IMG/VR virus record: IMGVR_UViG_3300026484_000007
Location: 124,001 to 188,000 of that record
Length of the DNA stretch: 64,000 bases
Strand: one strand, 5' to 3'
Shown here: piece by piece, positions 5,063-54,147 of the stretch
Layout of the letters: the number at the start of each line of letters is the position of its first letter
How positions within the stretch are numbered: the stretch's first letter is position 1
The notes under the pieces: generated by a model
Databases searched by the model: none
What the model was told of the DNA's origin: nothing
The model's input: only the letters and a program-made list of their open reading frames with translations
Program-made: the position numbers and the translations under genes

Positions 5063-5905
5063 TTAAATTTCGACGGTTTTGCCAACGTTTTCATTATTAT
5101 GATACTTATACCAAGTAAGTTTACTATGGTAAGGTTTATCATTATCAAATAAATCTTTATATACTAAATTGAAGTCAGTTTCACAGCAATGAACGTTTCT
5201 TACAGGATCATCCCAATTACTATAATCATGAAAAATAATAATTTCTTCTGCTTCATTAGTATTTATTAATTTTTTTACAATTTTTAAAATTTCAAAATTT
5301 GCTTTTGTATCGCCAGATACTAAAATCAATTTTGGATTATCTAATATTTTAAATAAAAATCCACATGCTTTATAATGACCATGATTCGCAAGAATTAATC
5401 TTGTTTCTAAAGAAAGAGTATTAAAATTCCATTGATCCTGATCTTTATCAAAAATTGTAAAACGGATTTTATCGAAAGATCCTGTTATACTTAAATAATG
5501 AATATAAACCATAGGAACCCAAACAGACTTTCCATATTCATTCATTTTATTAAATTTTTCATCGAATATACTTTCAAATTCATATTTTAATATATCGGGA
5601 ACATAAATATTTGTGCTTTTTCCCAATACAAAATAATTATAATAAATTAACCCTTCAAGGTCAGCGATATGATCGAAATGAAGATGTGTTATAAATACTC
5701 CATCTATTGATTTCTGCGATGTCATATAACCTTTATCTTTTAATTTTTTAAGAACATTATGTCCACAATCCACAAGGAAATTATAATTTTTATCTCCTTG
5801 AGTATAATTTAATAAAAAACTTGCGCTTGTTTCTCCAAAGTCAAAAGCTCCAGCGCTACCAAGTACTTCGATTTTTAATTTTAATTCGTGATCTTTTTTA
5901 AACAC
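5063..5905 (-). CDS. MBL-fold metallo-hydrolase, Apyc1 (anti-Pycsar)-like
   Basis: LGSAGAF, LVDCG, THLHFDH, SGDT, IFHD, VH motifs. Confidence 0.75.
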   Translation of the reverse strand: MFKKDHELKLKIEVLGSAGAFDFGETSASFLLNYTQGDKNYNFLVDCGHNVLKKLKDKGYMTSQKSIDGVFITHLHFDHIADLEGLIYYNYFVLGKSTNIYVPDILKYEFESIFDEKFNKMNEYGKSVWVPMVYIHYLSITGSFDKIRFTIFDKDQDQWNFNTLSLETRLILANHGHYKACGFLFKILDNPKLILVSGDTKANFEILKIVKKLINTNEAEEIIIFHDYSNWDDPVRNVHCCETDFNLVYKDLFDNDKPYHSKLTWYKYHNNENVGKTVEI

Positions 5906-5927
5906 AATTTTCTCCTTGTATTATTTT

Positions 5928-7127
5928 TTATTTTAATTCATTTAGATAAATTTCTTTTCCTATTTTTATTTTATCTAATTTTTTGCGAGGATAATCTTCA
6001 TACATAGCTGAGCTAATTAAATTATCCCAACCATCTCCTTGACCTTGAATATTATATAGATAAAAATATTTACTTTTATCTATCAATTGTAAATTTTCTT
6101 TTACTTTCTTGATTATATCATTCATGTTTTTTATATAACGATCATCTAAATCAAACACAGTCTTTAATGATTTTAAGTATTTAGGTTTTTTTAATATTAA
6201 TTTTACGAAGTTAATTATTTCGATATCAGTAGCTTTATACATATAACTTAAATTTTTATATAAATATTTTTTAATAATAGAATATTCTTTATCAAAATAT
6301 TTATCCATTTTAGATTCATTAAAATATTTTTTAATTAATCTTGGGACATTTTCCATATCACGATCAACTTCGTCTGAAATCTTTTCTATTATTTTTATGT
6401 ATTTATATTTTCTTTTAATCATTTCATTTTCAAAGATTATAAAATTAAAATACATAGCAATTTTTAATTCTAGATGATCGTTGATGAATATTTTTGCTTC
6501 GTCAATGAAATCAAAATATGATTCGATTGTATCAACAATTTCTTTTAGATTTTCTTTTATGATTTTTTTTGATAAATTTTCATTTTTTTCATTTTTGAAT
6601 AAATCATTTAAATCATTAATATCATCATATATCATATAACATAGAGTCCCGATTTGAGAAAGATATTTATTATTAAATAAATAAAATTGCACCAATTCTG
6701 GCTTAGATTTGATTTTTGAAATAACTTCAAGCGTCGTGATTATATCTTCCATCATAGCTTCGTAATCGAAAACATCTAAAATTAATTTATTTTTAAATTT
6801 TTTTCTATTTTGAATCTTTTTTAAATTATTGATATCTTTACCCGCTACTTTAAAATATTTGGCAACTTCTTTTTTTGATATAAATACTCTACCATTCTTA
6901 ATTTTAAAATTATTTATATCTGGCTCGTAATTGAATTTTTCTTTTAATTCTATTAAACTATTATTTAAATTTTCTTCCGAAAATGGAATTTGATATTCAA
7001 AATCATCGAACATGTCTTCATATTTTTGAAGATATTCTTCCTCCGATAATTTTTTGATGTCTTCATTAAATCCTACTATAAAACTACTTGAACTACTATT
7101 GCTTACAAATCCTGTTCTAATTTTCAT
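5928..7127 (-). CDS. phage protein of the MKIRxGFVSNSSSSSF family
   Basis: Characteristic N-terminal motif; function unknown. Confidence 0.7.
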   Translation of the reverse strand: MKIRTGFVSNSSSSSFIVGFNEDIKKLSEEEYLQKYEDMFDDFEYQIPFSEENLNNSLIELKEKFNYEPDINNFKIKNGRVFISKKEVAKYFKVAGKDINNLKKIQNRKKFKNKLILDVFDYEAMMEDIITTLEVISKIKSKPELVQFYLFNNKYLSQIGTLCYMIYDDINDLNDLFKNEKNENLSKKIIKENLKEIVDTIESYFDFIDEAKIFINDHLELKIAMYFNFIIFENEMIKRKYKYIKIIEKISDEVDRDMENVPRLIKKYFNESKMDKYFDKEYSIIKKYLYKNLSYMYKATDIEIINFVKLILKKPKYLKSLKTVFDLDDRYIKNMNDIIKKVKENLQLIDKSKYFYLYNIQGQGDGWDNLISSAMYEDYPRKKLDKIKIGKEIYLNELK

Positions 7128-7149
7128 TTTTTTCTCCTTTCTGTGTTTT

Positions 7150-7536
7150 TTATAATTTTATTAATTTATCTATTACTAAATTATAAAATCTTTCAAAAAT
7201 ATGATCGATTTTATTTTTTGCATTTAATACTAACTCACTTTCAAGTGATTTCAATAAGCATATGAAAAAAGATAAAAATACAATAATTATATTTAAAATA
7301 GGTATAAAAATTGCTATCGATTGTACGTATAAAAAATTATCCGGAAAATAATATTTATGATTTCCTTTTAATTCTTTATACACTCTTTTCTTTAAATCTT
7401 CTTCGCTTTCATTCGGATATAGTTTTTTAAATTTTTTATACGCATCATTCATAAAAACGCGTAGACTACAATACAATGTTAATAAACCTAAAATTACGAA
7501 TACTATATATTGTGCAATAAAAGACATTAAACTCAT
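7150..7536 (-). CDS. membrane protein (IFxPxxN family)
   Basis: Two TM segments; resembles 8305-8709 and 23607-23912. Confidence 0.7.
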   Translation of the reverse strand: MSLMSFIAQYIVFVILGLLTLYCSLRVFMNDAYKKFKKLYPNESEEDLKKRVYKELKGNHKYYFPDNFLYVQSIAIFIPILNIIIVFLSFFICLLKSLESELVLNAKNKIDHIFERFYNLVIDKLIKL

Positions 7537-7551
7537 TTTTCCTCCTCTTTT

Positions 7552-7851
7552 TTATTTTTTAATTATTTTTCTTACTTCATTTAATGAAGATAATGTTTGG
7601 TCAACGATATGCTTATTATGATCTGGAATTGCTATCATTCCAGTTGCCGTAATAAAACCTTGCGCAGTTGCTAATAAATGTTCGATCTTTTCTAGATCTT
7701 TTTCAGAGATGATGTATTTATCTTTAAAAAAATCATCTACCGCATTTAAACATGTTTCTCTTTGAGCCACTTGAATATTTTCTCCAGTAACTCCTTCCAT
7801 TGAAAAACATTGATCTTCGATCAATGTTTTTAGCGATTCTTTATAATTCAT
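7552..7851 (-). CDS. hypothetical protein
   Basis: 99-aa ORF with SD. Confidence 0.65.
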   Translation of the reverse strand: MNYKESLKTLIEDQCFSMEGVTGENIQVAQRETCLNAVDDFFKDKYIISEKDLEKIEHLLATAQGFITATGMIAIPDHNKHIVDQTLSSLNEVRKIIKK

Positions 7852-8312: not shown

Positions 8313-8709
8313 TTTTTTCTCCTTTTAAATTCAATTGTTTTTTAAGTAAAAAATCGATTATCTTAAGATAATATTTTACGATTTTATTTTTAATATAATC
8401 CCAAATATGTAATTTTTCAAACAGACCAATTATGCAATTTATAAATAAAATTATGAATAATAAAATATTTACGATAGGCATAAATATTGACAATACTCCT
8501 ATAAACGGATCTTCATTATCATTAGTAATTTTTATTTTAATTTTATTTTTCAATTCATTATAAATCTCTTTATTGGTCTTATTACTATAATTTCTTTTTA
8601 TCCAAGTAATTTCTTCTTTAATATATTTATACATTTCGCAGAGCATCATAATTCCGCTTAAAAAAACCGGAATTACATATACGATAATTAATGTATTAAT
8701 TAGCTCCAT
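8305..8709 (-). CDS. membrane protein (IFxPxxN family)
   Basis: Two TM segments. Confidence 0.7.
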   Translation of the reverse strand: MELINTLIIVYVIPVFLSGIMMLCEMYKYIKEEITWIKRNYSNKTNKEIYNELKNKIKIKITNDNEDPFIGVLSIFMPIVNILLFIILFINCIIGLFEKLHIWDYIKNKIVKYYLKIIDFLLKKQLNLKGEKND

Positions 8710-9743
8710 TACATTTCCTTTTCATTTAAAATTAAATGATAGCTATTCGGGGTTTCAATCCCTGCCTTTTTTTCTGCTAACTCTCTTTCTTTACAAGCCT
8801 CGCATTCCAAACATGGAACTGCAACTCCTTCTTTAATACTTGGATTATAACAAGTCCAAGTTTCATTTATAGGAACTTGTAATTCAAGAGCTCTTTTAAC
8901 TACTTCGTCTTTAGTATTATTTTTAAATGGAGCAAATAATCTAACTTTTTTAACATCATTCAATGATAATAATTCATTTAGTCTATACGCAAATTCTGGA
9001 GTAATATCCCAGTAATCTCTATGCTCTCCATAAGCTTCTTCTGAATGTTTATGGATTCCAAGACCAATTTTGACCTCATCGTATCCATTATTCAAAGCTA
9101 TAATTTCTCCAATCACTGTAGAAATAACTGAGAATAATAGATTTCTACTTGGAGTATAAAATTGGTGATTTGCTTGATCTTCGATAGATCCAGAATCTCT
9201 CATCTGAGCCCAGATATCTAAGAATTCATCAAATAAAGGTTTAAGATTCAATTTCTTAACCCCAATAATTTTACCATTAGAAATATATTTCTTCTGATAA
9301 ATATTTACTAAATTATCAAAAGCTTGCATTTCTACAAAATTCTTTTGATTGTAATTAAAATTAATTACAAAAACATCATAGCCTTGATAAAGAGCTTCGG
9401 CGCAAAGAGTTGCTGAATCTAATCCTCCACTCATTGAAATAATAGCTAATTTTCCCTTTCCCGGTAAATATTTACCAAGATATTTATCAAGCAAATCATT
9501 AAAATCTTTTGAAGCCATTTTATTTAATCTTTCTCTCCATTTATTATTCATTTTTTCATTAAGAAATTTTACCATTTCTCTTTTTGGATTTTTTCTATTT
9601 TTAACAGATGGTGCTCTTAATTTACTCCCAATATCTATCATAGTTTTCTTATGACAATTTGGGCATTCGATGATATAATCATCAAAAGGTGAGTGTTTTT
9701 TACTGAACCCACAATTAATACAAAGATACTTATTGTTTTTCAT
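8709..9743 (-). CDS. queC: 7-cyano-7-deazaguanine synthase with N-terminal Zn-ribbon extension
   Basis: SMSGGLDS, YTPSRNLLF, TWTCY, CLECEACKER; start moved to the SD-preceded ATG at 9743. Confidence 0.9.
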   Translation of the reverse strand: MKNNKYLCINCGFSKKHSPFDDYIIECPNCHKKTMIDIGSKLRAPSVKNRKNPKREMVKFLNEKMNNKWRERLNKMASKDFNDLLDKYLGKYLPGKGKLAIISMSGGLDSATLCAEALYQGYDVFVINFNYNQKNFVEMQAFDNLVNIYQKKYISNGKIIGVKKLNLKPLFDEFLDIWAQMRDSGSIEDQANHQFYTPSRNLLFSVISTVIGEIIALNNGYDEVKIGLGIHKHSEEAYGEHRDYWDITPEFAYRLNELLSLNDVKKVRLFAPFKNNTKDEVVKRALELQVPINETWTCYNPSIKEGVAVPCLECEACKERELAEKKAGIETPNSYHLILNEKEM

Positions 9744-9981
9744 TCTTTCCTCCTTTAATGTATTCAATAATATTTTTTTCGTATTTTTTAACTACATAAA
9801 CTACGCCAATTATTACAGCAAATAACCAAGAACCTACAATACTTAAAAAAAGCATTAATATAAATTCTTCTCTGATATCAGCTGCCGATTTATACTCAAT
9901 AATCTCACTTGATCTCATGAACTCAATACTTATATACAACGCTGCAATTGAACCAATAATCCATAATATAAAAAATAACAT
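9730..9981 (-). CDS. small membrane protein
   Basis: Two TM segments. Confidence 0.65.
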   Translation of the reverse strand: MLFFILWIIGSIAALYISIEFMRSSEIIEYKSAADIREEFILMLFLSIVGSWLFAVIIGVVYVVKKYEKNIIEYIKGGKNEKQ

Positions 9982-10345: not shown

Positions 10346-10846
10346 TTATAACAATTCAATTTCTTTTAATTTTTCAACCGTTTTATTTATGGCTTTTCCT
10401 AATAAATTTTGACCTTTCCAATTTTTTGGATTTTCGATCTTTTTGGATTTCCAATGAATGCCTACGCCCCATATTCTATCATATGGAGAACCTTCTACAA
10501 AAATACAATCTTGGTATTTTTTAAGTATTTCCAACAATTCTGGATTTTGCTTAAATTTATGAAAGTTTCCTGTCGTTACAATTTCAAATTTATTTTCATC
10601 CCAGATTTTTTGATCAAAATTTTTAACCTTTCTCCCAAGAGATTTTGCTTCTTTTGGATTATTTGAGTTTAGAATTTTTTCAGCCATTTCTTCATCTTCA
10701 AATAATTTTGCTTTCATAAACATCATATAATGCTCTGCTGAATAAAATTGTTTTCCGTATACTTCAAAACCATATAAACTCCACTGAGAAAATACTCCTC
10801 CCCAAAATGCTAAATATTTTTTTTCATTATTTATAAAAACTCTCAT
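10346..10846 (-). CDS. NADAR (YbiA-like) family protein
   Basis: FSQW, SAEHYMM, LGRKVKNFD, EGSPYDRIWGVG, GQNLLG. Confidence 0.92.
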   Translation of the reverse strand: MRVFINNEKKYLAFWGGVFSQWSLYGFEVYGKQFYSAEHYMMFMKAKLFEDEEMAEKILNSNNPKEAKSLGRKVKNFDQKIWDENKFEIVTTGNFHKFKQNPELLEILKKYQDCIFVEGSPYDRIWGVGIHWKSKKIENPKNWKGQNLLGKAINKTVEKLKEIELL

Positions 10847-10930: not shown

Positions 10931-12343
10931 TTAAATTTTTTTTCTAATATCTTCAAGAGAATATTCTTTTTGAATTTTACCATTTAAAAATACAGTTTCC
11001 ATCGCTGGAATTAAATTTTTATCATCAATACCTGGAATTGGATTTTGAAGACAAATTAATTTACCATTTTTATCTTTATAAACTTCAAGATAACCTTTTA
11101 ATGATTTTTTTCCAGAATCCGTAATTGGATCTTTAAAAACATCATGTCCTTTAATCTCGTTATTTTCTAAAGTTTCGATGTAACTGCATTTGCAAGCAAA
11201 ACTATAAGTATCTCTTGTTAATCCTGTTTGACCAATGTAAGTTCCTGATCCGAATACAAAAGTCTCAGCCGCTATTAATGGTAAATCTTTATATCCTTTT
11301 ACTGTAAAAGTTTCAAGAATATTTTTAATAGTATCTTTATTGATTCCATCTCCCCAAAGAATACCATATTTTGATGAAAAATATTTACTATTTGAAAATT
11401 GATCAAATACTCCATTAACAAGCATGATTTTTAGCATTTTCCCAAGAACTTCAATTGGATCCCCACTGTCTGGTCTAATTACTAATTTTTGATTAGGTCT
11501 TTCACTTAGAAGTTTTCTAATTTTACCAGATGGATTAGTAACCATATCTGTAAATTTAAACACATCATAACTATCGGCTACAAAGCTCATAATTGGTGCG
11601 TTTGGGTTTTCAAGAAGCATTCTATAAACAAATTCTTCTTCTCCATCGATCGAAGCGTTCGCTGTCGTGGTTGAATGTTCAGTAGCAAATACACTATATG
11701 AGCTAATTTTTTCATGGTAATAATCTCTACAAAATTTTAAACTGTGAAAATTATCAGTACCAAGAAAAATAGTATTATGCGCAAATCCAGAGATTGCTGC
11801 GCTTTCCACTGATGTCATACTTCTATCTCCGAAATTATGATAAGCAAATTTTGCCCATTCTGGGTCCCCGTATTTACAAAGCATATCATATACTTCTTTT
11901 GATTTCGTAGCTACTGTCGTTGGATACCACACTTTCATTAAAAGTGTTTCTACAAATCCTACTACCCACGGTACTTTTTTATCAGTACTTTCGATTAATA
12001 CCATTGGTATTTGAGCTGGAACCGCAGTTCCTTCTGGAAGAGCTTTAATTTTTATAGGTAATTTTCCATCAAGCTCTTCTGCTATATATTTCCATCCTTC
12101 ATAAGGAAATGATATCCCATGAAGATCTGCAAATTCTTTTGCTTCTTCAATCATTTCTATAGTAATTTTTTGACTTAAATATTCTTTAAGAATATATTGA
12201 AGCCCTACAAAAATCACTTCTCCATTATTATCCTGTACTCTTCTCGCTGTAAGATAATCTTGCATAAATACCATATTTTTTGGATATTGAAATGCGTGTC
12301 CATATTTATAACTATCTCCTAACATTACTACATTTACTTTCAT
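10931..12343 (-). CDS. nadV: nicotinamide phosphoribosyltransferase
   Basis: DSYK, HNFGDR, ATEHS, DSYD, IRPDSGDP, KDPITDSGKKS. Confidence 0.93.
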   Translation of the reverse strand: MKVNVVMLGDSYKYGHAFQYPKNMVFMQDYLTARRVQDNNGEVIFVGLQYILKEYLSQKITIEMIEEAKEFADLHGISFPYEGWKYIAEELDGKLPIKIKALPEGTAVPAQIPMVLIESTDKKVPWVVGFVETLLMKVWYPTTVATKSKEVYDMLCKYGDPEWAKFAYHNFGDRSMTSVESAAISGFAHNTIFLGTDNFHSLKFCRDYYHEKISSYSVFATEHSTTTANASIDGEEEFVYRMLLENPNAPIMSFVADSYDVFKFTDMVTNPSGKIRKLLSERPNQKLVIRPDSGDPIEVLGKMLKIMLVNGVFDQFSNSKYFSSKYGILWGDGINKDTIKNILETFTVKGYKDLPLIAAETFVFGSGTYIGQTGLTRDTYSFACKCSYIETLENNEIKGHDVFKDPITDSGKKSLKGYLEVYKDKNGKLICLQNPIPGIDDKNLIPAMETVFLNGKIQKEYSLEDIRKKI

Positions 12344-12382: not shown

Positions 12383-13477
12383 TTATAATATATTTGAAAA
12401 TTCTAAAATGATCTCTCTATGATCATCAAAAAATTTTATATAACTTCCGTCAAATGTTCTGTTTTCAATATCTTTAATTCTAATAAATTCAATTGATTCG
12501 GCATCATCAGATGCTTTAGCCACGTTCTTAATTTTTTTAATTATTTGAGAATTATTGATTTTAACTCCATGAACTATCGATAATCTTCTTCCATAAAGAC
12601 TTCTTTTTGGATGATCAAAAACCATTTTTTTATTTATTTTATCAATATATTCAGAGTATTCTGATAAATCAATTCCTGTTTCTTCTTTTAATTCTCTCAG
12701 CGCTCCAGTTAATGAATTCTCGTTATTATTTAAAAATCCTCCTGGTAATGCATGTGCATCTTTTCCTGGATTATATTTTCTTTTAATACAAAGAACTTCA
12801 TCTTGCAAAAATAATACAAAATCCACAGTTACGAAATTTAAAGTTTCCGGATAAGGATAACAAGAAAATTTTAATTTTTCCTGTTCAAGATATTCTTCTT
12901 CGGATTTTAAAAATCCTTGAAGTTCGTCGTATCTATCCATAATAACATTCATAGTGCTTTCTGGTATAAATTTAACCATATGCTCTTCGAAAACTTCTTT
13001 TCTTAAATAACTCAATTTTTCTCTGATATCTATACTCGAAAGATTATCATGTTTATTATCAACATGTGACATATTAAATGATGGAAATAAATTTAAATAA
13101 TATGAACTTTCATCTTTATTATGTCCATATAGATAAATATTTTCATCAGATATATCATTATTAAAAGAATACGAATAAATCTCGTCGCAAATCGTTTCGC
13201 GAACATTTTCAGCCCATTTATTATCATTGCACAAATAATCAGGAATTGATATTATCTTTATTTTCTCTTGAATTTTTTCATCAAAAGAATTAATGATCAT
13301 TTCTCTGATTTCAGTGAATTTAAATGGATTTTTATAACTTAAATGTCTATCACCACTTCCTACTAAAATTAATATGTAATCCATATTATCTTCTATCATT
13401 TCATTTATGATCTCTTTATGAGCATTATGGAATGGTTGAAATCTTCCAATCAATACTCCTAATTTTTCTTTTTTCAT
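12383..13477 (-). CDS. nadM: bifunctional NMN adenylyltransferase / Nudix hydrolase
   Basis: GRFQPFHNAH and Nudix box GG...ALRELKEETG. Confidence 0.92.
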   Translation of the reverse strand: MKKEKLGVLIGRFQPFHNAHKEIINEMIEDNMDYILILVGSGDRHLSYKNPFKFTEIREMIINSFDEKIQEKIKIISIPDYLCNDNKWAENVRETICDEIYSYSFNNDISDENIYLYGHNKDESSYYLNLFPSFNMSHVDNKHDNLSSIDIREKLSYLRKEVFEEHMVKFIPESTMNVIMDRYDELQGFLKSEEEYLEQEKLKFSCYPYPETLNFVTVDFVLFLQDEVLCIKRKYNPGKDAHALPGGFLNNNENSLTGALRELKEETGIDLSEYSEYIDKINKKMVFDHPKRSLYGRRLSIVHGVKINNSQIIKKIKNVAKASDDAESIEFIRIKDIENRTFDGSYIKFFDDHREIILEFSNIL

Positions 13478-46905: not shown

Positions 46906-47193
46906 TTATAATTTAACTCTCACCGGGTCTTCAAACCACTCCATTGTTGCGTTAGATGGAAGAATGATCTTCCATCTTTTTCTGGCAGTCGCCACTACCT
47001 CTTTTGGGTTGGTAGTGGCAAACACTGCCATGTCGCCGCTACGACCTGCAAGGCCGTAGACAGCGACTTTTATGTATTTGTCGCTGTCGTATGGTTTTAC
47101 CCATACGACAGCGACTTTAATTCCCTGAATATTTTGACTTGGCGCCTTTTGCGCCAAGTCGATTAATTCAAAAATATTTAAATTCAATTTCAT
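46906..47193 (-). CDS. small early-type protein
   Basis: Cassette promoter, SD, GC-richer. Confidence 0.7.
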   Translation of the reverse strand: MKLNLNIFELIDLAQKAPSQNIQGIKVAVVWVKPYDSDKYIKVAVYGLAGRSGDMAVFATTNPKEVVATARKRWKIILPSNATMEWFEDPVRVKL

Positions 47194-47272
47194 TCTTCCT
47201 CCTTAATTTTTTTTGCTATTAGATTATCAATGATTTAATTAATCATTATAAAATAAAAAGAAAAAGAAGAGG

Positions 47273-47539
47273 TTAGAGGTATTCGATCTTAACGATCTCC
47301 TCCTCTAAAAACACTCTTCTTTTTCTCTCTCCTCTCGGAGAGATTAAGTAGGCTTCTTTCAGCCCACCTTTCCCCGAAAGGAGATATCCCGTGCTTTTGC
47401 TGAATGCCCATTCAGCAAAAGCATTATAAATCCCGTATCCTCCCGCACTATAGTACGGGAACGGGATCACTTCCGAATTCCTTTTTTCCCAAATCAGTTC
47501 GAGCTTCCACTCGAACTGATATTTGAAATCTCTTTTCAT
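47273..47539 (-). CDS. small early-type protein
   Basis: Cassette promoter and SD. Confidence 0.7.
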   Translation of the reverse strand: MKRDFKYQFEWKLELIWEKRNSEVIPFPYYSAGGYGIYNAFAEWAFSKSTGYLLSGKGGLKEAYLISPRGERKRRVFLEEEIVKIEYL

Positions 47540-47645
47540 TCTTCCTCCTTAATTTTTTTTTGCTTAATTGATATCAATGAGGTTGTGGAAGAGTTCTAAA
47601 AATTTTAATGAAATAAAAAAAATTTTGATAAAAAGAAAGCTTGAG

Positions 47646-47930
47646 TCAAATGGCTCTTTCGAGCCATTTGACTGCCTTCTTCAAGGCTTTCACCTTGAAG
47701 TGAAGGTCGTCGACCTTCACTTTGAGCTCAAACTCTTCTGAGCTCAAAATATCCATATGCATGAGGAAGTCAACTTCCCCATGCATTTTAATATACTCGG
47801 CTTCAGCCGCTTCAAGAGCGGCTTCAGCAGCCTCAGTTTCCCTAAGAGCGGCTTTCGCCGCTCTTAGATTTTTTTTCTCTTCTTTAAGAGCGGCTTTCGC
47901 CGCTCTTAATAATTTTTCAATTTTTTCCAT
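47646..47930 (-). CDS. small helical early-type protein with an LRAAKAAL duplication
   Basis: Cassette promoter and SD. Confidence 0.7.
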   Translation of the reverse strand: MEKIEKLLRAAKAALKEEKKNLRAAKAALRETEAAEAALEAAEAEYIKMHGEVDFLMHMDILSSEEFELKVKVDDLHFKVKALKKAVKWLERAI

Positions 47931-48052
47931 TCTTCCTCCTTGAAATTTTTTTTTGCTATTAGATTATCAATGATACATAGATGTAATTCTAAAAAAAATT
48001 TTAAAAAAATTAAGAAAATTTAATAAATAAAAAATTAAGAAAAAAGCAACGG

Positions 48053-48247
48053 TTATTCCGGAGCGGGTAGCTCAACTACCTCAACTCCGTAACTAGGGTT
48101 GCTTTCTTCTTGGAGGGCGCGGACATATGCCTCCGCGTCCTCCTTTTCCCAGAATACTTTGGATACGGAACTGATTCCGTATCCAAAGTAACCATCTACG
48201 AAGTAGTACGCTACTCCGTAGATTTTTTTATTTTCTAAATTTTCCAT
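48053..48247 (-). CDS. small early-type protein
   Basis: Cassette promoter and SD. Confidence 0.7.
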   Translation of the reverse strand: MENLENKKIYGVAYYFVDGYFGYGISSVSKVFWEKEDAEAYVRALQEESNPSYGVEVVELPAPE

Positions 48248-48357
48248 ATCTCCTCCTTAATTTTTTTTGCTATTAGATTATCAATGATACATAGATGTAA
48301 TTCTAAAAAAAATTTTAAAAAAATTAAGAAATAAAAAGAGATTGGATGATCTGGAGT

Positions 48358-48561
48358 TTAAAACTCCAAGTCATCCAAATCATCTAATTCTAGCAGCTTC
48401 TCTAAAGCTGCTGCTTTTTCAGCAGCAGCTTTTGCTACTTTAGCCTCATACGAGGCCAAAATTGCGGCTTCTTTAGCCGCTTTTTTTGCTGCTGCAGCTT
48501 TTGCTGCAGCTGTTTCTGAGGCTCTTTGAGCCTCAGAAACTCTTTCAATTAGAAATTTCAT
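48358..48561 (-). CDS. Ala/Lys-rich microprotein with acidic tail
   Basis: SD-preceded ATG at 48561. Confidence 0.7.
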   Translation of the reverse strand: MKFLIERVSEAQRASETAAAKAAAAKKAAKEAAILASYEAKVAKAAAEKAAALEKLLELDDLDDLEF

Positions 48562-48681: not shown

Positions 48682-49317
48682 ATGTTTTTTATAAATGAAA
48701 TGACGGAGAAAAAAATAAATAATATCGCTAATATTATTATCGAATTAAATACTCTTTTAGAAGAAGCGGCAGGGAAATACTCAATGCCTTTAACTGGAGT
48801 TCCAAAAGCAGGAAAAAGTTTAATATCAGGTGGTTTAGATCATGTTTATAAAAAAAGCAAAGATAAATATTTTATAGAGAAATTATCGCCGGATATGGAA
48901 GGAAAATGGACTTTTGATACCGGAAAGTTAGAATTAGCTAGAGAAATGAAAAATAAATTAAAAGACAAAAATGAGTTTTTTGATGATAGATTCGTAAAAA
49001 TAAAAAATACTCATATTCCTAATTTAATTAAAAATTTTGATAAAACTGTGTTTGATTTGGGAGGTATTCCTTCGAAAGAAAACGAGAGTTTTATCGATAA
49101 TATACAAAAAAGTTCAATTTTAAATGATAAAAAATTCGTACCAGTCGTTCTTTCTCCTGATAGACAGAAATCGTACGAATGGCAAAAGTTTTTCAATGAA
49201 AAATTCGAAACCGATCCTATAATTTATACTCCAAATTGGAATTTTAAAAAAGATATAAAACAACAATCGATATATCATGCTAATGAACTTCTTAACCGAA
49301 TCCAAAAAAGATTATAA
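48682..49317 (+). CDS. P-loop ATPase of the Csx3-associated (AAA-type) family
   Basis: GVPKAGKS Walker A, SPDMEGKW (cf. CPDGEGxW, from recall), VFDLGG Walker B; convergent with csx3. Confidence 0.7.
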   Translation: MFFINEMTEKKINNIANIIIELNTLLEEAAGKYSMPLTGVPKAGKSLISGGLDHVYKKSKDKYFIEKLSPDMEGKWTFDTGKLELAREMKNKLKDKNEFFDDRFVKIKNTHIPNLIKNFDKTVFDLGGIPSKENESFIDNIQKSSILNDKKFVPVVLSPDRQKSYEWQKFFNEKFETDPIIYTPNWNFKKDIKQQSIYHANELLNRIQKRL

Positions 49318-49338: not shown

Positions 49339-49635
49339 TTACACAGGGATTATATCTCCGACTTTTACGTCGGGTGTGTGGCTTTCAGCCACAATTCCCC
49401 CGCTTAGGCGAGGGTCGTAGCACGCCACGAATGGCGTGCAATGGTACTCATGTACCATCGCGGCAAAGAGCCATATCGGCCCTCTACCGCTTAAAATTAT
49501 ACCTACCCCAGGTTCAACCTGAGGCAATCTTTTAATTGCCTCAGGTAACTCCGCAGGGGTAATAACCCCACTTGTGAGCTCAAAGCTCACAAGTGCAATT
49601 TTATCGCTTACTTCTTTTACATCATATTTTATCAT
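49339..49635 (-). CDS. csx3: CRISPR ring nuclease Csx3/Crn3
   Basis: GVITPAEL, GIILSGRGPIWLFA..H.YH, YDPRL.GGIV..SH. Confidence 0.9.
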   Translation of the reverse strand: MIKYDVKEVSDKIALVSFELTSGVITPAELPEAIKRLPQVEPGVGIILSGRGPIWLFAAMVHEYHCTPFVACYDPRLSGGIVAESHTPDVKVGDIIPV

Positions 49636-49998: not shown

Positions 49999-50151
49999 TT
50001 ATTCAGAAGTCGCAAGAACAGCTGCTTCGAAAGCAGCCTCAAGAGGCATTTCAGCCTCTTGAACTGCCTGAAGCATCGCTGCTACAAGCGCTTCAGAAGG
50101 GGCATTAAGCCCCTTCGAAGCCAAGAAAGCTAAAATCGCTTTCTTGTCCAT
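49999..50151 (-). CDS. Ala-rich microprotein (50 aa)
   Basis: Manual translation MDKKAILAFLASKGLNAPSEALVAAMLQAVQEAEMPLEAAFEAAVLATSE; promoter and SD present. Confidence 0.7.
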   Translation of the reverse strand: MDKKAILAFLASKGLNAPSEALVAAMLQAVQEAEMPLEAAFEAAVLATSE

Positions 50152-50379
50152 TTTCCTCCTTTATAATTTTTTTGCTAATTAAATATCTAATAAAACTAAA
50201 GCAGTTCTAAAAATTCTTTAAAAATAAAAATGAAGGAGGGAGAGAGGAAAGAGAAAGAAAAGAGAGGGAAAATGTCGCTATATTTCTAATAAAACTTTTT
50301 AGTTCTAAAATCGATTTTAAAATAATTTAAAAATAATTTAAAAAATAAATTTTTTTGATAAATAAAAGTCTGGCGAGAG

Positions 50380-50697
50380 TTATAATAACTCCTTCCAAAC
50401 TTCGTGCAAATCGTTTGCTGCTTTATATAATTTTTTTTTCAATTTCTTTAATTTTTTGATTTTGCCTCTATTTACACGAAGCTCGTCCTCGAGCTTCGTT
50501 TTATGGCGGGAATACTCCGCCATTTCTTCCCCAGAGGCTCCTACCTCTGGGAAGTTTAATCTTTCATTCTGCAACCAGCAGAACTTGAGGTGCTCTCGCA
50601 CCTCTTTTAATTCTTTTAATTCGCATTTTACTTTCTCAGCCTCATATCTGAGGCTATTTTCATAATCGAATACTTCATTTTTTAAATCTTTTCTCAT
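50380..50697 (-). CDS. small coiled-coil early-type protein
   Basis: Cassette promoter and SD. Confidence 0.7.
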   Translation of the reverse strand: MRKDLKNEVFDYENSLRYEAEKVKCELKELKEVREHLKFCWLQNERLNFPEVGASGEEMAEYSRHKTKLEDELRVNRGKIKKLKKLKKKLYKAANDLHEVWKELL

Positions 50698-50772
50698 TTC
50701 TTTCTCCTTTGATTTTTTTTGCTAATTAAATATCTAATAAACCAAAAGCAGTTCTAAAAATTCTTTAAAAAT

Positions 50773-50908
50773 AAAAAAGATAGGAGGAGTCCGCATAAGC
50801 GAACTCCCGGACCTCAAAGGGTCACGTAGCTTTATGACACAGATATGGTTACTCGTTCCGAAGAACTTTCACCATATCGAAAGGTGCCATAAAGCTACCC
50901 TATCTACT
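50773..50908 (-). ncRNA. putative structured ncRNA 2 (~135 nt, multi-way junction, loop E, UUCG tetraloop)
   Basis: Closing stem AGAUAGG/CCUAUCU, 15-bp and 8-bp stems, GAAA/GAGUA internal loop, GUUC-UUCG-GAAC, two more hairpins, U-tract; own promoter. Confidence 0.8.
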
Positions 50909-50944
50909 ATTTATATATCTAATAAACGTTTACGAGTTCTAAAA
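50901..50944 (-). promoter_or_regulatory. phage promoter identical to 4679-4722
   Basis: 44-bp exact repeat. Confidence 0.75.
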
Positions 50945-51000
50945 TAATTTAAACCATTTTTTCTAACGACAAAAAAACGCGTGAGATCTTAAATAGATCA

Positions 51001-51546
51001 TCACGCGCGAATATCGATTAAGAACTTTTTTTCTTTGAGAGTATTTACTCTCATTTGAAGTTCCTTAATCGTTTTTGGATCTTCAAAAGATCCTTCTGTA
51101 ACTTCGCAAGAACTTGTCTCTAGACTTTCGATAATTTCTTCATCTAGGACCTTTCTTGTTTTTTTAGAAGAATCTTTTTTCGATTCTTTTTTTACTTTTT
51201 CAATTTTGAGAGATTCTTCTATATACAATCTCTCATAACCCTCAGCTAATCTGAGGGTTTCAATAGCAAGATCTTTGAAGTAAGCTGCTTTGCTTTTAGC
51301 AGCTCTCACTTCATTAATCTTTTCATGGCGCTCTTTTTTAAGCGCTTTTTTCAAAGATTTGATCTCCTCGTTACGTTTTTCAATAACGCTTTTTAGGAGA
51401 TCAATCTCCTTTTTTTGGTCCTCAATTTTTTTATCGCGGCTGAGGATCATTTCCGCTAACTCTTTTGGCGAATACTTTGTCGCCAGTTCAATAACGCGTT
51501 TGAACTTATCAAATACGTTATTGATTTTTTCCTCTAATTTTTTCAT
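51001..51546 (-). CDS. coiled-coil protein
   Basis: 181-aa ORF with promoter motif upstream. Confidence 0.7.
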   Translation of the reverse strand: MKKLEEKINNVFDKFKRVIELATKYSPKELAEMILSRDKKIEDQKKEIDLLKSVIEKRNEEIKSLKKALKKERHEKINEVRAAKSKAAYFKDLAIETLRLAEGYERLYIEESLKIEKVKKESKKDSSKKTRKVLDEEIIESLETSSCEVTEGSFEDPKTIKELQMRVNTLKEKKFLIDIRA

Positions 51547-51603
51547 TTTAAATCCTTTTTTAACTATTTTTGATATATAAATATCAATGTTAAAAAGGAT
51601 CTT

Positions 51604-52935: not shown

Positions 52936-52993
52936 TATTTATCCTTTTCTGTTTTATTTTTATATAATTTTATAACTGCAACTATTTATATCT

Positions 52994-53332
52994 TTATGAT
53001 TCATTTTCAGATTCAATCTTGGAATCTTTAAGTTTTTTAAGATATTCATCTAATTCATAATCCAATATACTTTTGGTATCTACTGGAACATCTGGCAATT
53101 CCAATGATTCTATTTCTATCCAAAAAGGATTTTTAGGAATTTCGATATATACCGGCAAATCTTGCTTTGGATAATATAATTTTTGAATACTGATATAATC
53201 CTCCAAAAATACAGTTATCCCATCATCTAATATCTTAGGCAACCAAGCAAATTTAGTTACCGCTCGATAAGGATGATTATTATATTTTTTGATTACTTCT
53301 GTTTTCCAAAACATTAATGTTCCTTCGATCAA
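52994..53332 (-). CDS. hypothetical protein
   Basis: 112-aa ORF with FAWLP motif. Confidence 0.6.
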   Translation of the reverse strand: MIEGTLMFWKTEVIKKYNNHPYRAVTKFAWLPKILDDGITVFLEDYISIQKLYYPKQDLPVYIEIPKNPFWIEIESLELPDVPVDTKSILDYELDEYLKKLKDSKIESENES

Positions 53333-53357
53333 TCTTTAATTAATCTTTAATCGATCT

Positions 53358-53546
53358 TTAATGGATCAAATTATTTACTACGTACATCACAAGACTCCCT
53401 GATGCTAATCCGGTTGAAAAGGAAGTAATATGCGATATCCATTCAGGTTTATTTTTTATGGATACATAACCTGCGACAAAAGACGCTAGATATCCAAAAG
53501 AATAAACAAGAATTCCAATGATTATTACTTGGATTTCTGGACTCAT
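53358..53546 (-). CDS. small membrane protein
   Basis: Two TM segments. Confidence 0.6.
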   Translation of the reverse strand: MSPEIQVIIIGILVYSFGYLASFVAGYVSIKNKPEWISHITSFSTGLASGSLVMYVVNNLIH

Positions 53547-53547
53547 T

Positions 53548-54147
53548 TTATTTTACCAAAACCCAATCTTCAGCTAAAATATCTGCTTGACTTGCTAACC
53601 ATCCTGGTTGTATTGTTCCAAGAGCTGTTCTCATAGCAATTACTTCATCAACTTTAACATGTCCGGAATCTCTATAATCATTCTCATCCCTTTTTATAAT
53701 ATCTGGAAAATATCTTTTTAATTCAAATTGACATTGGCAAGAATGTAACATCTTTTTTGTAATTAAGCGTAGATACATACCTTTACCGTTCCATCCAATT
53801 CTTGCAACTTTATATCCCGCTTTTAATAAAGTAATTGCGTCTCCAAATGAAAATCTAGTTTCTGGATCTTCTAAATTTACATAATTCTTATCAAAGAATT
53901 CTTTATTAATAAACCAACAATCTGGATTTTGCAATTGCTCATTAACTCCGTCCCAAACTTCATCAATACTATTAATATCTCCAGCGATAACTCCAACAAC
54001 TTCATCTGATTTAAAATCGACTGTATTCATATCATGTTCACTGATACTGATAAAACTATAATTACCATTTAATGCTTCTAAATCTTTTCCAGTGACTTCT
54101 AGTACTTCGCTAATTTTATTTCCTCTTAATGTTAAAATTCTTTTCAT
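53548..54147 (-). CDS. DUF2829/Tad2-domain protein with an extra N-terminal domain
   Basis: FGDAI.LLKAG.KVAR.GWNGKGM...WLASQADILAEDW. Confidence 0.85.
   Translation of the reverse strand: MKRILTLRGNKISEVLEVTGKDLEALNGNYSFISISEHDMNTVDFKSDEVVGVIAGDINSIDEVWDGVNEQLQNPDCWFINKEFFDKNYVNLEDPETRFSFGDAITLLKAGYKVARIGWNGKGMYLRLITKKMLHSCQCQFELKRYFPDIIKRDENDYRDSGHVKVDEVIAMRTALGTIQPGWLASQADILAEDWVLVK

What the first reader, a model, noticed from the sequence alone, without database searches (positions are those of the whole stretch)
5063..54147. Window-wide set of genes against nucleotide-messenger immunity
Within 50 kb lie an Apyc1-like gene (cCMP/cUMP), a Tad2 domain (gcADPR), Csx3 (cA4), a putative SAM(-AMP) lyase, NadV/NadM (NAD depletion), NADAR (DNA ADP-ribosylation), an RNA ligase (RNA repair) and the deazaguanine pathway (restriction). 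Inference: unusually broad coverage, which raises the prior that neighbouring unknown ORFs and ncRNAs are also counter-defence.
Basis: inference. Interest (0 to 1): 0.6.

Follow-up and report, generated by a model that had tools for sequence, protein, structure and literature searches.

The report
Vent jumbo phage's anti-signal gene arsenal
A 272-kb phage from a hydrothermal vent really does carry many genes that destroy, soak up or rebuild the small molecules bacteria use as immune alarms, and two of them (a Csx3 ring nuclease and a SAM-AMP lyase, both copies of CRISPR "off-switch" enzymes) sit in a distinctive array of small, separately promoted gene cassettes whose other members are unknown.

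Summary
The listed genes exist, and seven of eight assignments hold at family level. The SAM-AMP lyase, Csx3/Crn3, Tad2-like domain, NadV+NadM (NARP2), NADAR and Rnl1-type ligase are solid. The Apyc1-like gene is nearest to Apyc1 but falls below Pfam's threshold. The four preQ0-synthesis genes are present, but no DNA transglycosylase (DpdA) was found, so anti-restriction DNA modification is unproven.

The genes are not one island. Most have backbone composition (GC3 about 0.17) and are scattered through the replication and nucleotide-metabolism arm of an IMG/VR jumbo phage (272,602 bp, 27% GC).

The new structure lies at 42.4-51.6 kb. Twelve small GC-rich ORFs (GC3 about 0.41), including the SAM-AMP lyase and Csx3, each carry the same roughly 60-nt promoter/leader module, which is found with this leader nowhere else in the genome. 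A structured RNA in the array uses the same promoter core.

Next to Csx3 lies a P-loop NTPase of the family that cells fuse to Csx3. A published survey of 28,114 phage genomes listed no Crn3, and 50,697 GenBank phage records gave no Csx3 hit here; eight IMG/VR contigs do carry one.

The "raised prior" for neighbours is justified for this cassette array, not for the whole window.

The parts
5063..5905 (-). Apyc1-like class II metallo-beta-lactamase-fold phosphodiesterase (280 aa; HxHxDH at H74-H79)
   Evidence: Pfam Lactamase_B_2 39 bits; Apyc1 model 29 bits, below its cut-off of 50. phrog_392. A profile of 9 homologues hits 7T28 (phage Bsp38 Apyc1) at E 1e-18, against YhfI at 2e-9. AF2 pLDDT 85; the top four Foldseek hits are the Apyc1 structures, TM 0.58-0.70, with YhfI close behind.
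8709..9767 (-). QueC (7-cyano-7-deazaguanine synthase) with an N-terminal Zn-ribbon extension
   Evidence: Pfam QueC 111 bits. TIGR00364 101 bits, below the equivalog cut-off.
10346..10846 (-). NADAR domain protein, YbiA/ribofla_fusion type, directly upstream of NadV-NadM in coordinates
   Evidence: Pfam NADAR 156 bits. TIGR02464 149 bits against a cut-off of 73.7.
10931..12343 (-). NadV / Nampt (nicotinamide phosphoribosyltransferase), first NARP2 enzyme
   Evidence: NAMPT_N plus NAPRTase. NF006629 412.9 bits against a cut-off of 405.
12383..13477 (-). NadM-type bifunctional NMN adenylyltransferase / Nudix, second NARP2 enzyme
   Evidence: CTP_transf_like plus NUDIX. Full-length match to NF003786, 207 bits, below the equivalog cut-off.
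18439..19365 (-). Rnl1-family RNA ligase (308 aa; motif I lysine in KANG)
   Evidence: Pfam RNA_lig_T4_1 106 bits. A Pnkp-like kinase plus metallophosphoesterase protein lies elsewhere in the genome (G000 84881-86809).
34063..34911 (-). QueE-like radical SAM enzyme
   Evidence: The top five NCBIfam hits are all QueE families, but below their cut-offs. The nearest phage relatives are Cellulophaga phage QueE.
38910..39509 (-). GC-rich orphan ORF (199 aa) behind a variant of the cassette promoter and a leader hairpin
   Evidence: GC 0.39, GC3 0.38. Promoter core at 39602-39618. No relative in 5.8e9 proteins by word search, and none in Pfam, NCBIfam, Atlas or GenBank phages.
42446..42829 (-). SAM-AMP lyase (127 aa, PII-like), cassette 1
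   Evidence: E 5e-28, full length, about 42% identity to C. botulinum SAM-AMP lyase 9GAD/9GAB/9LQD. Ten of the 11 residues that PMC12255297 lists as lining the ligand site are identical, including catalytic E71 (here E75), W64 and F84, which stack the AMP adenine, and T110 and Y122, which contact the bridging phosphate. GC 0.46. Cassette promoter at 42854-42870.
42956..43396 (-). Cassettes 2 and 3: orphan ORFs of 52 aa (42956-43114) and 65 aa (43199-43396)
   Evidence: Same promoter/leader module. GC 0.42 and 0.34.
46906..48561 (-). Cassettes 4-8: orphan ORFs of 95, 88, 94, 64 and 67 aa (46906-47193, 47273-47539, 47646-47930, 48053-48247, 48358-48561)
   Evidence: Each has its own copy of the module. 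GC 0.42-0.45. No usable Pfam, PHROG or NCBIfam hits; the only matches were far below cut-off. The Atlas gave nothing usable for the 95-aa ORF.
48784..49317 (+). P-loop NTPase (177 aa from M35 of ORF 48682-49317), convergent with Csx3; a stand-alone homologue of the NTPase module fused to Csx3 in cells
   Evidence: 271 relatives in 1.84e9 representatives. Nine of 10 sampled relatives carry a fused Cas_csx3 domain. A homologue lies directly downstream of csx3 in viral contigs L002 and L007. AF2 pLDDT 94, generic SIMIBI/kinase-like fold. Backbone-like GC of 0.27.
49339..49635 (-). Csx3 / Crn3 ring nuclease (98 aa), cassette 9
   Evidence: Cas_csx3 92 bits. TIGR02579 above its cut-off. AfCsx3 hit at E 5e-18. 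The equivalents of H57, H60, D69, R71 and H80 (H62, H65, D74, R76, H86) are invariant (PMC7371418). GC 0.47. Promoter at 49661-49697. A 17-bp-stem terminator is shared with the NTPase gene.
49999..51546 (-). Cassettes 10-12: orphan ORFs of 50, 105 and 181 aa (49999-50151, 50380-50697, 51001-51546)
   Evidence: Same module. GC 0.34-0.48. No usable family hits.
50775..50943 (-). Structured small RNA candidate (nc2, about 115-130 nt) with its promoter, inside the cassette array
   Evidence: The promoter is identical over 44 nt to that of nc1. MFE -67.5 kcal/mol, z = -8.9, ending in a terminator hairpin plus T-run. No Rfam match.
53548..54147 (-). Tad2-like (DUF2829) domain at residues 98-198, fused to an unknown 95-aa N-terminal region
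   Evidence: Pfam Tad2-like 77 bits. PDB hits: 8KBI E 9e-17, SptTad2 8WJD 6e-13, SPO1 Tad2 8SME 3e-10. Single copy in the genome.
55189..55980 (-).
   Evidence: Pfam 96 bits. The NCBIfam FolE families are the best hits, below their cut-offs.
58263..58859 (-).
   Evidence: Pfam PTPS 80 bits. TIGR03367 62 bits, below its cut-off.
4440..4721 (-). Structured RNA candidate nc1 (about 245 nt) with the same promoter core as the cassettes
   Evidence: GC 0.44 in a 305-bp gap. MFE -116.9 kcal/mol, z = -7.7, with a terminal hairpin plus T-run. Promoter at 4682-4721.

Best explanation
The window is the leftward-transcribed replication, nucleotide-metabolism and host-takeover arm of an uncultivated jumbo phage from a hydrothermal vent. 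It carries two layers of counter-defence.

Layer 1 consists of long-resident genes with backbone composition, scattered among replication genes:
- An Apyc1-like MBL phosphodiesterase, inferred to hydrolyse cyclic mononucleotide alarm signals.
- A Tad2-like domain protein, inferred to act as a sponge for gcADPR and possibly cyclic dinucleotides.
- NadV plus NadM, the NARP2 route, which rebuilds NAD+ from nicotinamide and PRPP after NAD-depleting effectors fire. An adjacent YbiA-type NADAR is inferred to remove ADP-ribose from guanine or to act in ADP-ribose metabolism.
- An Rnl1 ligase which, with a Pnkp-like healing enzyme 37 kb away, could reseal RNAs cut by host ribonucleases.
- Four preQ0-synthesis genes whose product has no identified DNA-insertion enzyme.

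Layer 2 is a compositionally foreign array at 42.4-51.6 kb, with an outlier at 38.9-39.5 kb. It holds 12 single-gene cassettes. Each cassette has its own sigma70-like promoter (TTTAGAAC, then about 17 nt, then GATAAT/GATATA), an identical A-rich leader with a strong Shine-Dalgarno site, and a small GC-rich ORF. Two cassettes encode enzymes that cells use to switch off type III CRISPR signalling. Csx3/Crn3 cleaves cA4 with Mn2+ in head-to-tail dimer stacks. The SAM-AMP lyase splits SAM-AMP into MTA-AMP and homoserine lactone. Expressed from the phage, both would remove the second messenger before Csx1/Csm6-type or CorA effectors are activated.

Csx3 is accompanied by the P-loop NTPase that cells fuse to it. 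The role of that NTPase is unknown.

Shown here: gene identities, conserved catalytic residues, the shared regulatory module, the composition contrast, and the Csx3-NTPase linkage. Inferred: that these genes are expressed early, that they act against the host's immunity, and that the ten orphan cassettes and the embedded RNA do likewise.
For: - Family assignments.
- Apyc1 proximity.
- SAM-AMP lyase: residue mapping from the alignment against PMC12255297.
- Csx3: catalytic residues invariant (PMC7371418). Cellular homologues sit in Cmr loci beside Csx1.
- Cassette composition: GC3 0.41 against 0.18 in backbone genes, Mann-Whitney p = 2e-8.
- Shared module: aligned in 12 cassettes. With its A-rich leader it is confined genome-wide to window 42.8-51.6 kb.
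- NTPase partner.
- Viral Csx3 elsewhere: 8 IMG/VR contigs, one next to a portal gene and others next to primase/RecA or a cell-wall hydrolase, with no Cas domain among the 10 neighbouring proteins scanned.
- Literature: phage SAM-AMP lyase as candidate AcrIIIB4 (PMC12255297); NARP2 overcomes NAD depletion (10.1101/2024.02.11.579819); Tad2 homologues sequester gcADPR (10.1101/2023.11.15.567273); NADARs reverse guanine ADP-ribosylation (PMC11543638, PMC11125620).
- Pnkp-like protein.
Against: - No activity, expression or host data exist.
- The Apyc1 Pfam score is under its cut-off. Foldseek barely separates Apyc1 (1e-13) from the cAMP/cGMP-preferring YhfI (4e-12) and RNase Z (5e-10).
- NCBIfam names the NADAR a riboflavin-intermediate N-glycosidase. 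NADAR antitoxin activity in vivo is system-specific (PMC11125620).
- NARP2-type genes were first described as ordinary NAD salvage.
- No DpdA was found.
- In cells Csx3 and SAM-AMP lyase are housekeeping off-switches, and in the tested system SAM-AMP degradation was required for immunity rather than opposing it (PMC12255297).
- The NTPase gene has backbone GC while Csx3 is GC-rich, which argues against a recent joint acquisition.
- The ten other cassette ORFs have no usable family or profile match, and the two searched further have no relatives, so their role is pure inference.
Confidence: 0.7

Rival explanations
1. Ordinary auxiliary metabolism of a large phage. NadV/NadM/NADAR, the preQ0 genes, ThyX, the dNMP kinase, the MazG-like protein and the RNA ligase simply boost nucleotide and cofactor supply and RNA/tRNA maintenance. 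The MBL enzyme is an RNase Z/BN-type processor for the phage's five tRNAs. Only the Tad2 domain, Csx3 and the lyase are true counter-defence.
For: - These genes have backbone composition and are interleaved with replication genes.
- NCBIfam names the NADAR a riboflavin-intermediate N-glycosidase.
- A homologue of the MBL protein is annotated ribonuclease BN, and RNase Z structures match at E 5e-10.
- The genome has five tRNA genes.
- No DpdA was found.
Against: - The MBL protein's nearest solved relatives, by sequence and by fold, are the Apyc1 proteins.
- NARP2 has been shown experimentally to defeat NAD-depleting defences (10.1101/2024.02.11.579819).
- Phage NADARs remove guanine ADP-ribose (PMC11125620).
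- A Pnkp-like healing enzyme accompanies the ligase, the classic anti-anticodon-nuclease pair.
Confidence: 0.2
2. The GC-rich cassettes are not counter-defence as a class. They are a generic moron or early-gene array (host-takeover, superinfection exclusion, regulators) that happens to include two captured CRISPR accessory genes. Their GC richness reflects exchange by recombination among related phages, or codon adaptation, not function.
For: - Ten of the 12 cassette ORFs have no usable family or profile match, and the two searched further have no relatives.
- The same promoter core also drives RNAs and other units elsewhere in the genome.
- The narrow GC range of 0.34-0.48, contrasted with Csx3 homologues that range from 0.24 to 0.66, suggests one common source pool rather than independent captures.
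Against: - The only two cassettes with an assignable function both degrade type III CRISPR second messengers.
- Known anti-defence genes tend to be small, orphan, individually promoted and clustered (PMC11724313 describes anti-defence islands).
Confidence: 0.3
3. Csx3, the NTPase and the lyase serve the phage's own regulation. For example, they could tune host type III signalling to keep the host alive long enough, or act on phage RNA (Csx3 was first described as a deadenylase). On this view they do not abolish immunity.
For: - In the B. fragilis system SAM-AMP degradation is needed for immunity rather than opposing it (PMC12255297).
- Csx3 binds RNA tetranucleotides and was first called an RNA deadenylase (PMC7371418).
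Against: - Csx3 is cA4-specific with a shared active site across dimers (PMC7371418), and those residues are kept here.
- The AMP-stacking and phosphate-contacting residues specific to SAM-AMP are kept in the lyase.
Confidence: 0.1

Closest known systems
AcrIII-1 (DUF1874) viral ring nuclease and other phage-borne ring nucleases (Csx16, Csx20, viral SAVED)
   Same: A virus-encoded enzyme that would degrade cA4 to disarm type III CRISPR ancillary effectors. It is a small, stand-alone gene.
   Different: - The fold and chemistry differ. Csx3/Crn3 is Mn2+-dependent and builds its active site between stacked dimers.
- The survey of 28,114 phage genomes, which used a Crn3 HMM, listed AcrIII-1 (36), Csx20 (4) and Csx16 (2) but no Crn3 (PMC12409355).
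- tblastn against 50,697 phage records found none.
- Here it comes with a separate NTPase partner.
Cellular Crn3/Csx3 and Csx3-NTPase ('Csx3-AAA') fusions in type III CRISPR loci
   Same: - The same Pfam and TIGRFAM family, with all catalytic residues kept.
- The same NTPase family as in the fusions.
   Different: - It is encoded in a phage with no cas genes nearby.
- The two modules are separate, convergent genes with different base composition.
- Identity to any cellular Csx3 is at most about 52% over the full length.
[quoted passage not shown]
   Same: A PII-like lyase whose catalytic Glu and SAM-AMP-specific contacts are conserved. A role as an anti-type III-B (CorA) enzyme is proposed (PMC12255297).
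   Different: It is a stand-alone 127-aa protein without the N-terminal domain of AcrIIIB4. It resembles the cellular CRISPR enzyme over its full length (about 42% identity). It comes from a vent phage rather than a human-microbiome phage.
NARP2 of Vibrio phage KVP40 (Nampt + Nmnat/Nudix)
   Same: The same two enzyme families in adjacent genes.
   Different: A YbiA-type NADAR gene lies immediately beside the pair. Activity has not been tested.
Anti-defence islands / anti-CRISPR loci of phages and MGEs; early-gene moron arrays of large phages
   Same: Runs of small, mostly orphan genes with their own strong promoters, containing known anti-defence genes (PMC11724313).
   Different: - Every cassette carries its own copy of one conserved promoter/leader module.
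- The cassettes have a uniform foreign GC content in a 27% GC genome.
- Helicase genes interrupt the array.
- A structured RNA uses the same promoter.
- No Aca-type regulator was identified.

Membership tests
Csx3 / Crn3 ring nuclease | Match to the curated family models above threshold | tested here: met
   PF09620 92.5 bits (cut-off 21). TIGR02579 91.8 bits (cut-off 55.4).
Csx3 / Crn3 ring nuclease | Conserved catalytic and cA4-binding residues (AfCsx3 H57, H60, D69, R71, H80; GRGPIW loop) | tested here: met
   H62, H65, D74, R76, H86 and SGRGPIWL are invariant in alignment A1. Residue roles are from PMC7371418.
Csx3 / Crn3 ring nuclease | Mn2+-dependent cleavage of cA4; association with a type III CRISPR locus | not testable with these tools
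In this genome the gene is not near cas genes. Cellular homologues are.
SAM-AMP lyase (PII-like SAM lyase superfamily) | Full-length homology to the solved SAM-AMP lyase | tested here: met
   E 5e-28 over residues 5-126 to 9GAD/9GAB/9LQD. No Pfam or PHROG model matched.
SAM-AMP lyase (PII-like SAM lyase superfamily) | Catalytic Glu (E71), Q108, and the SAM-AMP-specific contacts W64, F84, T110, Y122 | tested here: met
   E75, Q111, W68, F88, T113 and Y125 are identical in the alignment. Only T112 changes, to Ser. Residue list from PMC12255297.
SAM-AMP lyase (PII-like SAM lyase superfamily) | Specific cleavage of SAM-AMP rather than SAM | not testable with these tools
   Needs an enzyme assay.
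Apyc1 (anti-Pycsar MBL phosphodiesterase) | Score above the Pfam PF23023 gathering threshold | tested here: not met
   29.1 bits against a cut-off of 50; only the N-terminal 97 residues align.
Apyc1 (anti-Pycsar MBL phosphodiesterase) | MBL fold with an HxHxDH di-zinc site; closest solved relatives are Apyc1 | tested here: met
   H74, H76, D78 and H79 are invariant. 7T28 is the best sequence hit. 7U2S, 7U2R and 7T28 are the top Foldseek hits.
Apyc1 (anti-Pycsar MBL phosphodiesterase) | Relaxed specificity including cCMP/cUMP, conferred by an Apyc1-specific loop in the pocket | tested here: inconclusive
   Foldseek separates Apyc1 from YhfI only marginally (1e-13 against 4e-12). The loop was not analysed and activity is untested.
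Tad2 (DUF2829 sponge) | DUF2829 / Tad2-like domain above threshold and homologous to solved Tad2 proteins | tested here: met
   PF11195 77 bits (cut-off 25). 8KBI 9e-17, 8WJD 6e-13, 8SME 3e-10.
Tad2 (DUF2829 sponge) | Tetramer that binds gcADPR (and cyclic dinucleotides in some members) | not tested
   Binding residues were not mapped. The family also includes AcrIIA7, which acts on tracrRNA (PMC13133391). Here the domain is fused to an unknown 95-aa N-terminal region.
NARP2 (Nampt + Nmnat) | Both enzymes present and adjacent | tested here: met
   NadV at 10931-12343 is above the NCBIfam cut-off. NMNAT-Nudix at 12383-13477 has a full-length match below the equivalog cut-off.
NADAR guanine de-ADP-ribosylase | NADAR domain present; subfamily residue in the last strand | tested here: inconclusive
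   The domain is strong (156 bits). The best NCBIfam model is the YbiA/ribofla_fusion type. The sequence shows a Glu in the FVEGSP strand by inspection, which is not aligned to a reference. In vivo specificity cannot be predicted (PMC11125620).
RNA repair (Rnl1 + Pnkp) | Rnl1 nucleotidyltransferase domain with the motif I lysine, plus an end-healing kinase/phosphatase in the genome | tested here: met
   RNA_lig_T4_1 106 bits. AAA_33 kinase plus Metallophos in a 642-aa protein. The T4-type PNK3P phosphatase is absent.
7-deazaguanine DNA modification (Dpd-type) | preQ0 synthesis genes FolE, QueD, QueE, QueC | tested here: met
   All four were found. All are divergent and below the NCBIfam equivalog cut-offs.
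7-deazaguanine DNA modification (Dpd-type) | DpdA DNA transglycosylase, the signature protein of such phages (10.1101/2023.04.13.536721) | tested here: not met
   - PF01702 gave no hit.
- PF20314 (DpdA4) gave no hit.
- No CxCxxC Zn motif occurs in any ORF of 200 aa or more.
- A 7-phage DpdA HMM gave a best E of 0.03.
- DpdA3 was not tested, and the record is estimated 97% complete.

The most novel reading that the evidence does not exclude
The 42.4-51.6 kb array is a dedicated, promoter-defined anti-defence cassette array. The phage swaps in genes captured from a pool of roughly 45% GC. The ten orphan cassettes, the 199-aa outlier and the embedded structured RNA would encode new inhibitors of nucleotide-messenger immunity, with type III CRISPR first among the targets. 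Phage-borne Crn3 with its detached NTPase partner would be a new class of viral ring-nuclease anti-CRISPR.
Probability: 0.35. Interest if true: 0.8.

Novelty: new variant of a known kind. Interest (0 to 1): 0.62.

Why it matters
Three things would follow if this holds.

1. Crn3/Csx3 would join AcrIII-1, Csx16/20 and viral SAVED as a ring nuclease recruited by viruses. It would be the first to arrive with the enigmatic NTPase partner, giving a handle on what that NTPase does.
2. One phage would target both known classes of type III CRISPR messenger (cA4 and SAM-AMP), in addition to Thoeris, Pycsar and NAD-depletion signals. That implies hosts at vents stack these systems.
3. The shared promoter/leader module is a simple sequence tag that picks out about ten orphan genes and an RNA as candidates for new anti-defence functions. 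Such a short list is what discovery screens need.

Tried and rejected
- **orf199 as the missing DpdA.** Phage phiSM DpdA gave its best, weak genome hit on orf199 (tblastn E 0.07; pairwise E 8e-5 across a DSxG-like motif). A 7-member phage DpdA profile did not recover it, and tblastn of orf199 against all GenBank phages found nothing. Rejected.
- **29947-30897 as DpdA3.** Its only hit was one unannotated faecal phage contig. No support.
- **Complex prediction, Csx3 with the NTPase.** No verdict (score 0.00). This is evidence neither for nor against binding.
- **Read laying on 46800-51700.** As a result, no read-level test of cassette presence or absence in other samples, or of transcript ends, was possible.
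- **Single-protein IMG/VR scans.** Scans for Csx3, the lyase, the helicase and phiSM DpdA found no close relatives. Megablast of 20 kb against GenBank phages gave no match.
- **Rfam.** Nothing at gathering thresholds, and only sub-threshold matches by E-value.
- **Generic sigma70 scan.** Uninformative in this AT-rich DNA (59 sites against 58.8 expected). The promoter claim rests on the conserved module instead.
- **ESM Atlas searches.** Searches for orf199 and the 95-aa ORF gave nothing usable.
- **Other anti-defence families in the genome.** No AcrIII-1 above threshold, no macrodomain, and no N6/N4 or Dam methyltransferases.
- **Genetic code.** No alternative genetic code was needed or used.

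Full report
**Setting.** The window is bases 124,001-188,000 of a single 272,602-bp IMG/VR virus record. The record is linear and CheckV estimates it 97% complete. Its GC content is 27%, and it has five tRNA genes outside the window. The DNA occurs in a hydrothermal-vent metagenome. Nearly all window genes are on the - strand. No GenBank phage is similar at the DNA level. A weak RNA polymerase beta-prime fragment and the genome size mark it as a jumbo phage.

**Checking the list.**
- The 127-aa ORF 42446-42829 has no Pfam or PHROG hit. It matches the solved C. botulinum SAM-AMP lyase over its full length at E 5e-28.
- I mapped the residues that PMC12255297 lists as lining the ligand site onto that alignment. 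Ten of 11 are identical. They include the catalytic Glu, the Trp and Phe that stack the AMP adenine, and the Thr and Tyr that contact the bridging phosphate. Several of these contacts have no structural equivalent in plain SAM lyase. This supports a SAM-AMP lyase rather than a T3-type SAM lyase.
- ORF 49339-49635 is a Csx3/Crn3 above both curated thresholds. It aligns to A. fulgidus Csx3 at E 5e-18. The equivalents of H57, H60, D69, R71 and H80 are kept (PMC7371418).
- The C-terminal half of 53548-54147 is a Tad2-like domain. Its closest solved relatives are the AcrIIA7/Tad2-type protein 8KBI, SptTad2 and SPO1 Tad2.
- NadV passes the NCBIfam equivalog cut-off. The neighbouring gene is a full-length NMNAT-Nudix. 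Together they form the NARP2 pair (10.1101/2024.02.11.579819).
- The adjacent NADAR is strong, but of the YbiA/ribofla_fusion type.
- The RNA ligase is Rnl1-type. The genome also holds a 642-aa kinase plus metallophosphoesterase protein of Pnkp-like architecture, so a heal-and-seal pair exists.
- The Apyc1-like gene is the weakest assignment. The Pfam Apyc1 model scores 29 bits against a cut-off of 50. However, the best PDB hit by sequence and by profile is phage Bsp38 Apyc1, 7T28. An AF2 model (pLDDT 85) finds the three Apyc1 structures first, only narrowly ahead of YhfI and RNase Z.
- FolE, QueD, QueE-like and QueC are all present but divergent.
- No DpdA was detected. PF01702, PF20314/DpdA4, a Zn-motif scan and a profile of seven phage DpdAs all failed. 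DpdA is regarded as the signature of deazaguanine DNA modification (10.1101/2023.04.13.536721), so the anti-restriction reading is unproven. DpdA3 was not tested.

**Is it a set?** It is not a physical unit. Between the listed genes lie ThyX, a metallophosphoesterase, an ATP-dependent DNA ligase, RecJ, a P-loop kinase, an actin-like protein, two helicases and a ClpP-like protease by Pfam. By reading of the translations, an SSB and a clamp loader are also there. This is the replication and nucleotide-metabolism arm of the phage. By published base rates the arsenal is still unusually broad. Only 20% of 13,487 phages carry any known anti-defence gene, and phiKZ carries one (PMC11724313). NARP2 occurs in about 1.1% of phages.

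**What the sequence adds: a compositionally foreign class of ORFs.** Base composition splits the genes into two classes.
- Eighty-two backbone ORFs average GC 0.27 and GC3 0.18. This group includes the Apyc1-like gene, NADAR, NadV, NadM, Rnl1 and the Tad2 protein.
- Twelve small ORFs between 42.4 and 51.6 kb average GC 0.42 and GC3 0.41 (Mann-Whitney p = 2e-8). One ORF at 38.9-39.5 kb is similar.
- Genome-wide, coding ORFs of this composition are almost confined to this stretch.
- The SAM-AMP lyase and Csx3 belong to this class.

**What the sequence adds: one shared regulatory module.** Each of the 12 ORFs is preceded by the same module: TTTAGAAC, 14-17 nt, CATTGATA (or TATTAGATA), 7-8 nt, TAG, then CAAAAAAAA, AAGGAGG and the ATG (alignment A3).
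- It reads as a sigma70-like promoter (-35 TTAGAA, 17 nt, -10 GATAAT) with a leader of about 25 nt.
- The promoter core occurs at roughly 15 other places in the genome. With the A-rich leader it occurs only here.
- Several units end in hairpin plus T-run terminators.
- The two helicase genes split the array. The backbone genes that follow cassettes share a different upstream box.
- Ten of the 12 cassette ORFs, and the 199-aa outlier, have no usable match in Pfam or NCBIfam; the two also run through PHROGs matched nothing there. The word search and GenBank-phage tblastn for orf199, and the two Atlas searches (orf199 and the 95-aa ORF), also found nothing.

**RNAs on the same promoter.** Two structured RNAs use an identical 44-nt version of the promoter. 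One lies at about 4440-4685 (z = -7.7) and one inside the array at about 50775-50903 (z = -8.9). Rfam has no match for either.

**The Csx3 partner.** The only + strand gene in the region, 48682-49317, is convergent with Csx3 and shares a terminator with it. Its likely start is at 48784.
- It is a P-loop NTPase with conserved GxPxxGK, PDxEGxW and DLGGxPSxEN motifs.
- Homologues lie directly downstream of csx3 in two IMG/VR contigs, overlapping it by 4 nt in one.
- An exhaustive profile search found 271 relatives. Nine of 10 sampled relatives carry a fused Cas_csx3 domain, at either end.
- It is therefore the NTPase that the literature notes as fused to Crn3 with unknown function (PMC12409355).
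- Its model is confident (pLDDT 94), but the fold is a generic SIMIBI/kinase-like P-loop.
- None of 52 cellular stand-alone csx3 loci had it nearby at this sensitivity.
- The gene has backbone GC (0.27), unlike Csx3. This is unexplained.

**Viral Csx3 elsewhere.**
- tblastn against 50,697 phage records found none.
- A published HMM survey of 28,114 phage genomes listed AcrIII-1, Csx20 and Csx16 but no Crn3.
- A profile scan of IMG/VR found eight contigs with GC from 0.29 to 0.56.
- One of them is a distant relative of this phage (L009).
- One has csx3 1.7 kb from a portal gene. Others have it beside primase/RecA or a cell-wall hydrolase. No Cas domain was found among the 10 neighbouring proteins scanned.
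- Cellular relatives at 37-52% identity are scattered over archaea and bacteria of thermal habitats, including Campylobacterota. Where the context was examined, the gene sits in a Cmr locus beside Csx1.

**Interpretation.** The phage has a resident layer of messenger-directed and damage-repair functions, and a second, foreign-looking cassette layer. In that second layer the only two identifiable genes both destroy type III CRISPR messengers. The mechanism for those two follows from the conserved chemistry of their families. Their counter-defence role, the early timing of expression and the role of the other cassettes are inferences. The uniform GC of the cassettes suggests a common donor pool, or exchange among related phages at the conserved module, but this was not tested.

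**Limits.**
- No host, expression or activity data are available.
I sent none of those letters to search tools afterwards.
- Complex prediction gave no verdict.

Noticed in passing
window 4440-4721 (-): A GC-rich (0.44) 305-bp gap holds a promoter of the cassette type followed by a structured RNA of about 245 nt. MFE is -116.9 kcal/mol, z = -7.7, with a terminal hairpin plus T-run. There is no Rfam match.
   Followed up: partly
G000:C1 21862, 69498, 188299, 221806, 226179, 235379: Six copies of a second conserved unit. It has the same -35 box (TTTAGAAC) and a TTTAGATATCTA -10 region, followed by a conserved CGCAACGTT...GAGTTTTCAA element. It is probably another promoter/operator class of this phage.
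   Followed up: no
G000:C1 215710-215746 and 216560-216596 (-); GC-rich patch 215780-215960: Two further cassette-type promoters outside the window are followed by near-identical structured leaders. A noncoding patch of GC 0.58 lies nearby, next to the only other GC-rich coding ORF in the genome (216645-217265, a 206-aa membrane protein).
   Followed up: no
window 25951-27612 (-): Three tandem paralogous ORFs (177, 179 and 189 aa) with the same N-terminal and C-terminal motifs. They were recognised by reading the translations. Function unknown.
   Followed up: no
window 24805-25941 (-): Radical SAM/SPASM-like protein with weak Pfam hits but a 341-bit match to phrog_7293 (unknown function). The contig's last bases also appear to encode a radical SAM-like protein.
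   Followed up: no
window 17222-18160 (-): A secreted or lipoprotein-like protein with an NMT1/TAXI-type solute-binding domain (Pfam NMT1_3, N-terminal part only). This is an unusual cargo for a phage.
   Followed up: no
G000:C1 83428-84144 and 84881-86809 (-): A second QueC-like gene lies next to the 642-aa Pnkp-like protein (AAA_33 kinase plus calcineurin-like phosphoesterase plus about 280 uncharacterised C-terminal residues).
   Followed up: partly
window 51604-52329 (-) and 40809-41720 (-): A PIG-L/LmbE-family deacetylase directly follows the cassette array. An actin-like (ALP_N / MreB-like_C) protein lies between the dNMP-kinase-like gene and the lyase cassette.
   Followed up: no
window 38854-38909, 42401-42445, 46779-46905: The backbone genes that follow cassettes (RecJ, the 226-aa ORF and the helicase) share another upstream box, TTTATTTGCTTAAAAAAATTAAAAAGGA. 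This suggests a second promoter class that resumes backbone transcription after each insertion.
   Followed up: no
L009 6100-6170 and 7170-7340: In the distantly related 167-kb IMG/VR phage, csx3 is flanked by short, very GC-rich noncoding elements that look like structured RNA.
   Followed up: no
They lie in the gap 3' of the 105-aa cassette ORF. They were left out of all later searches.
   Followed up: no
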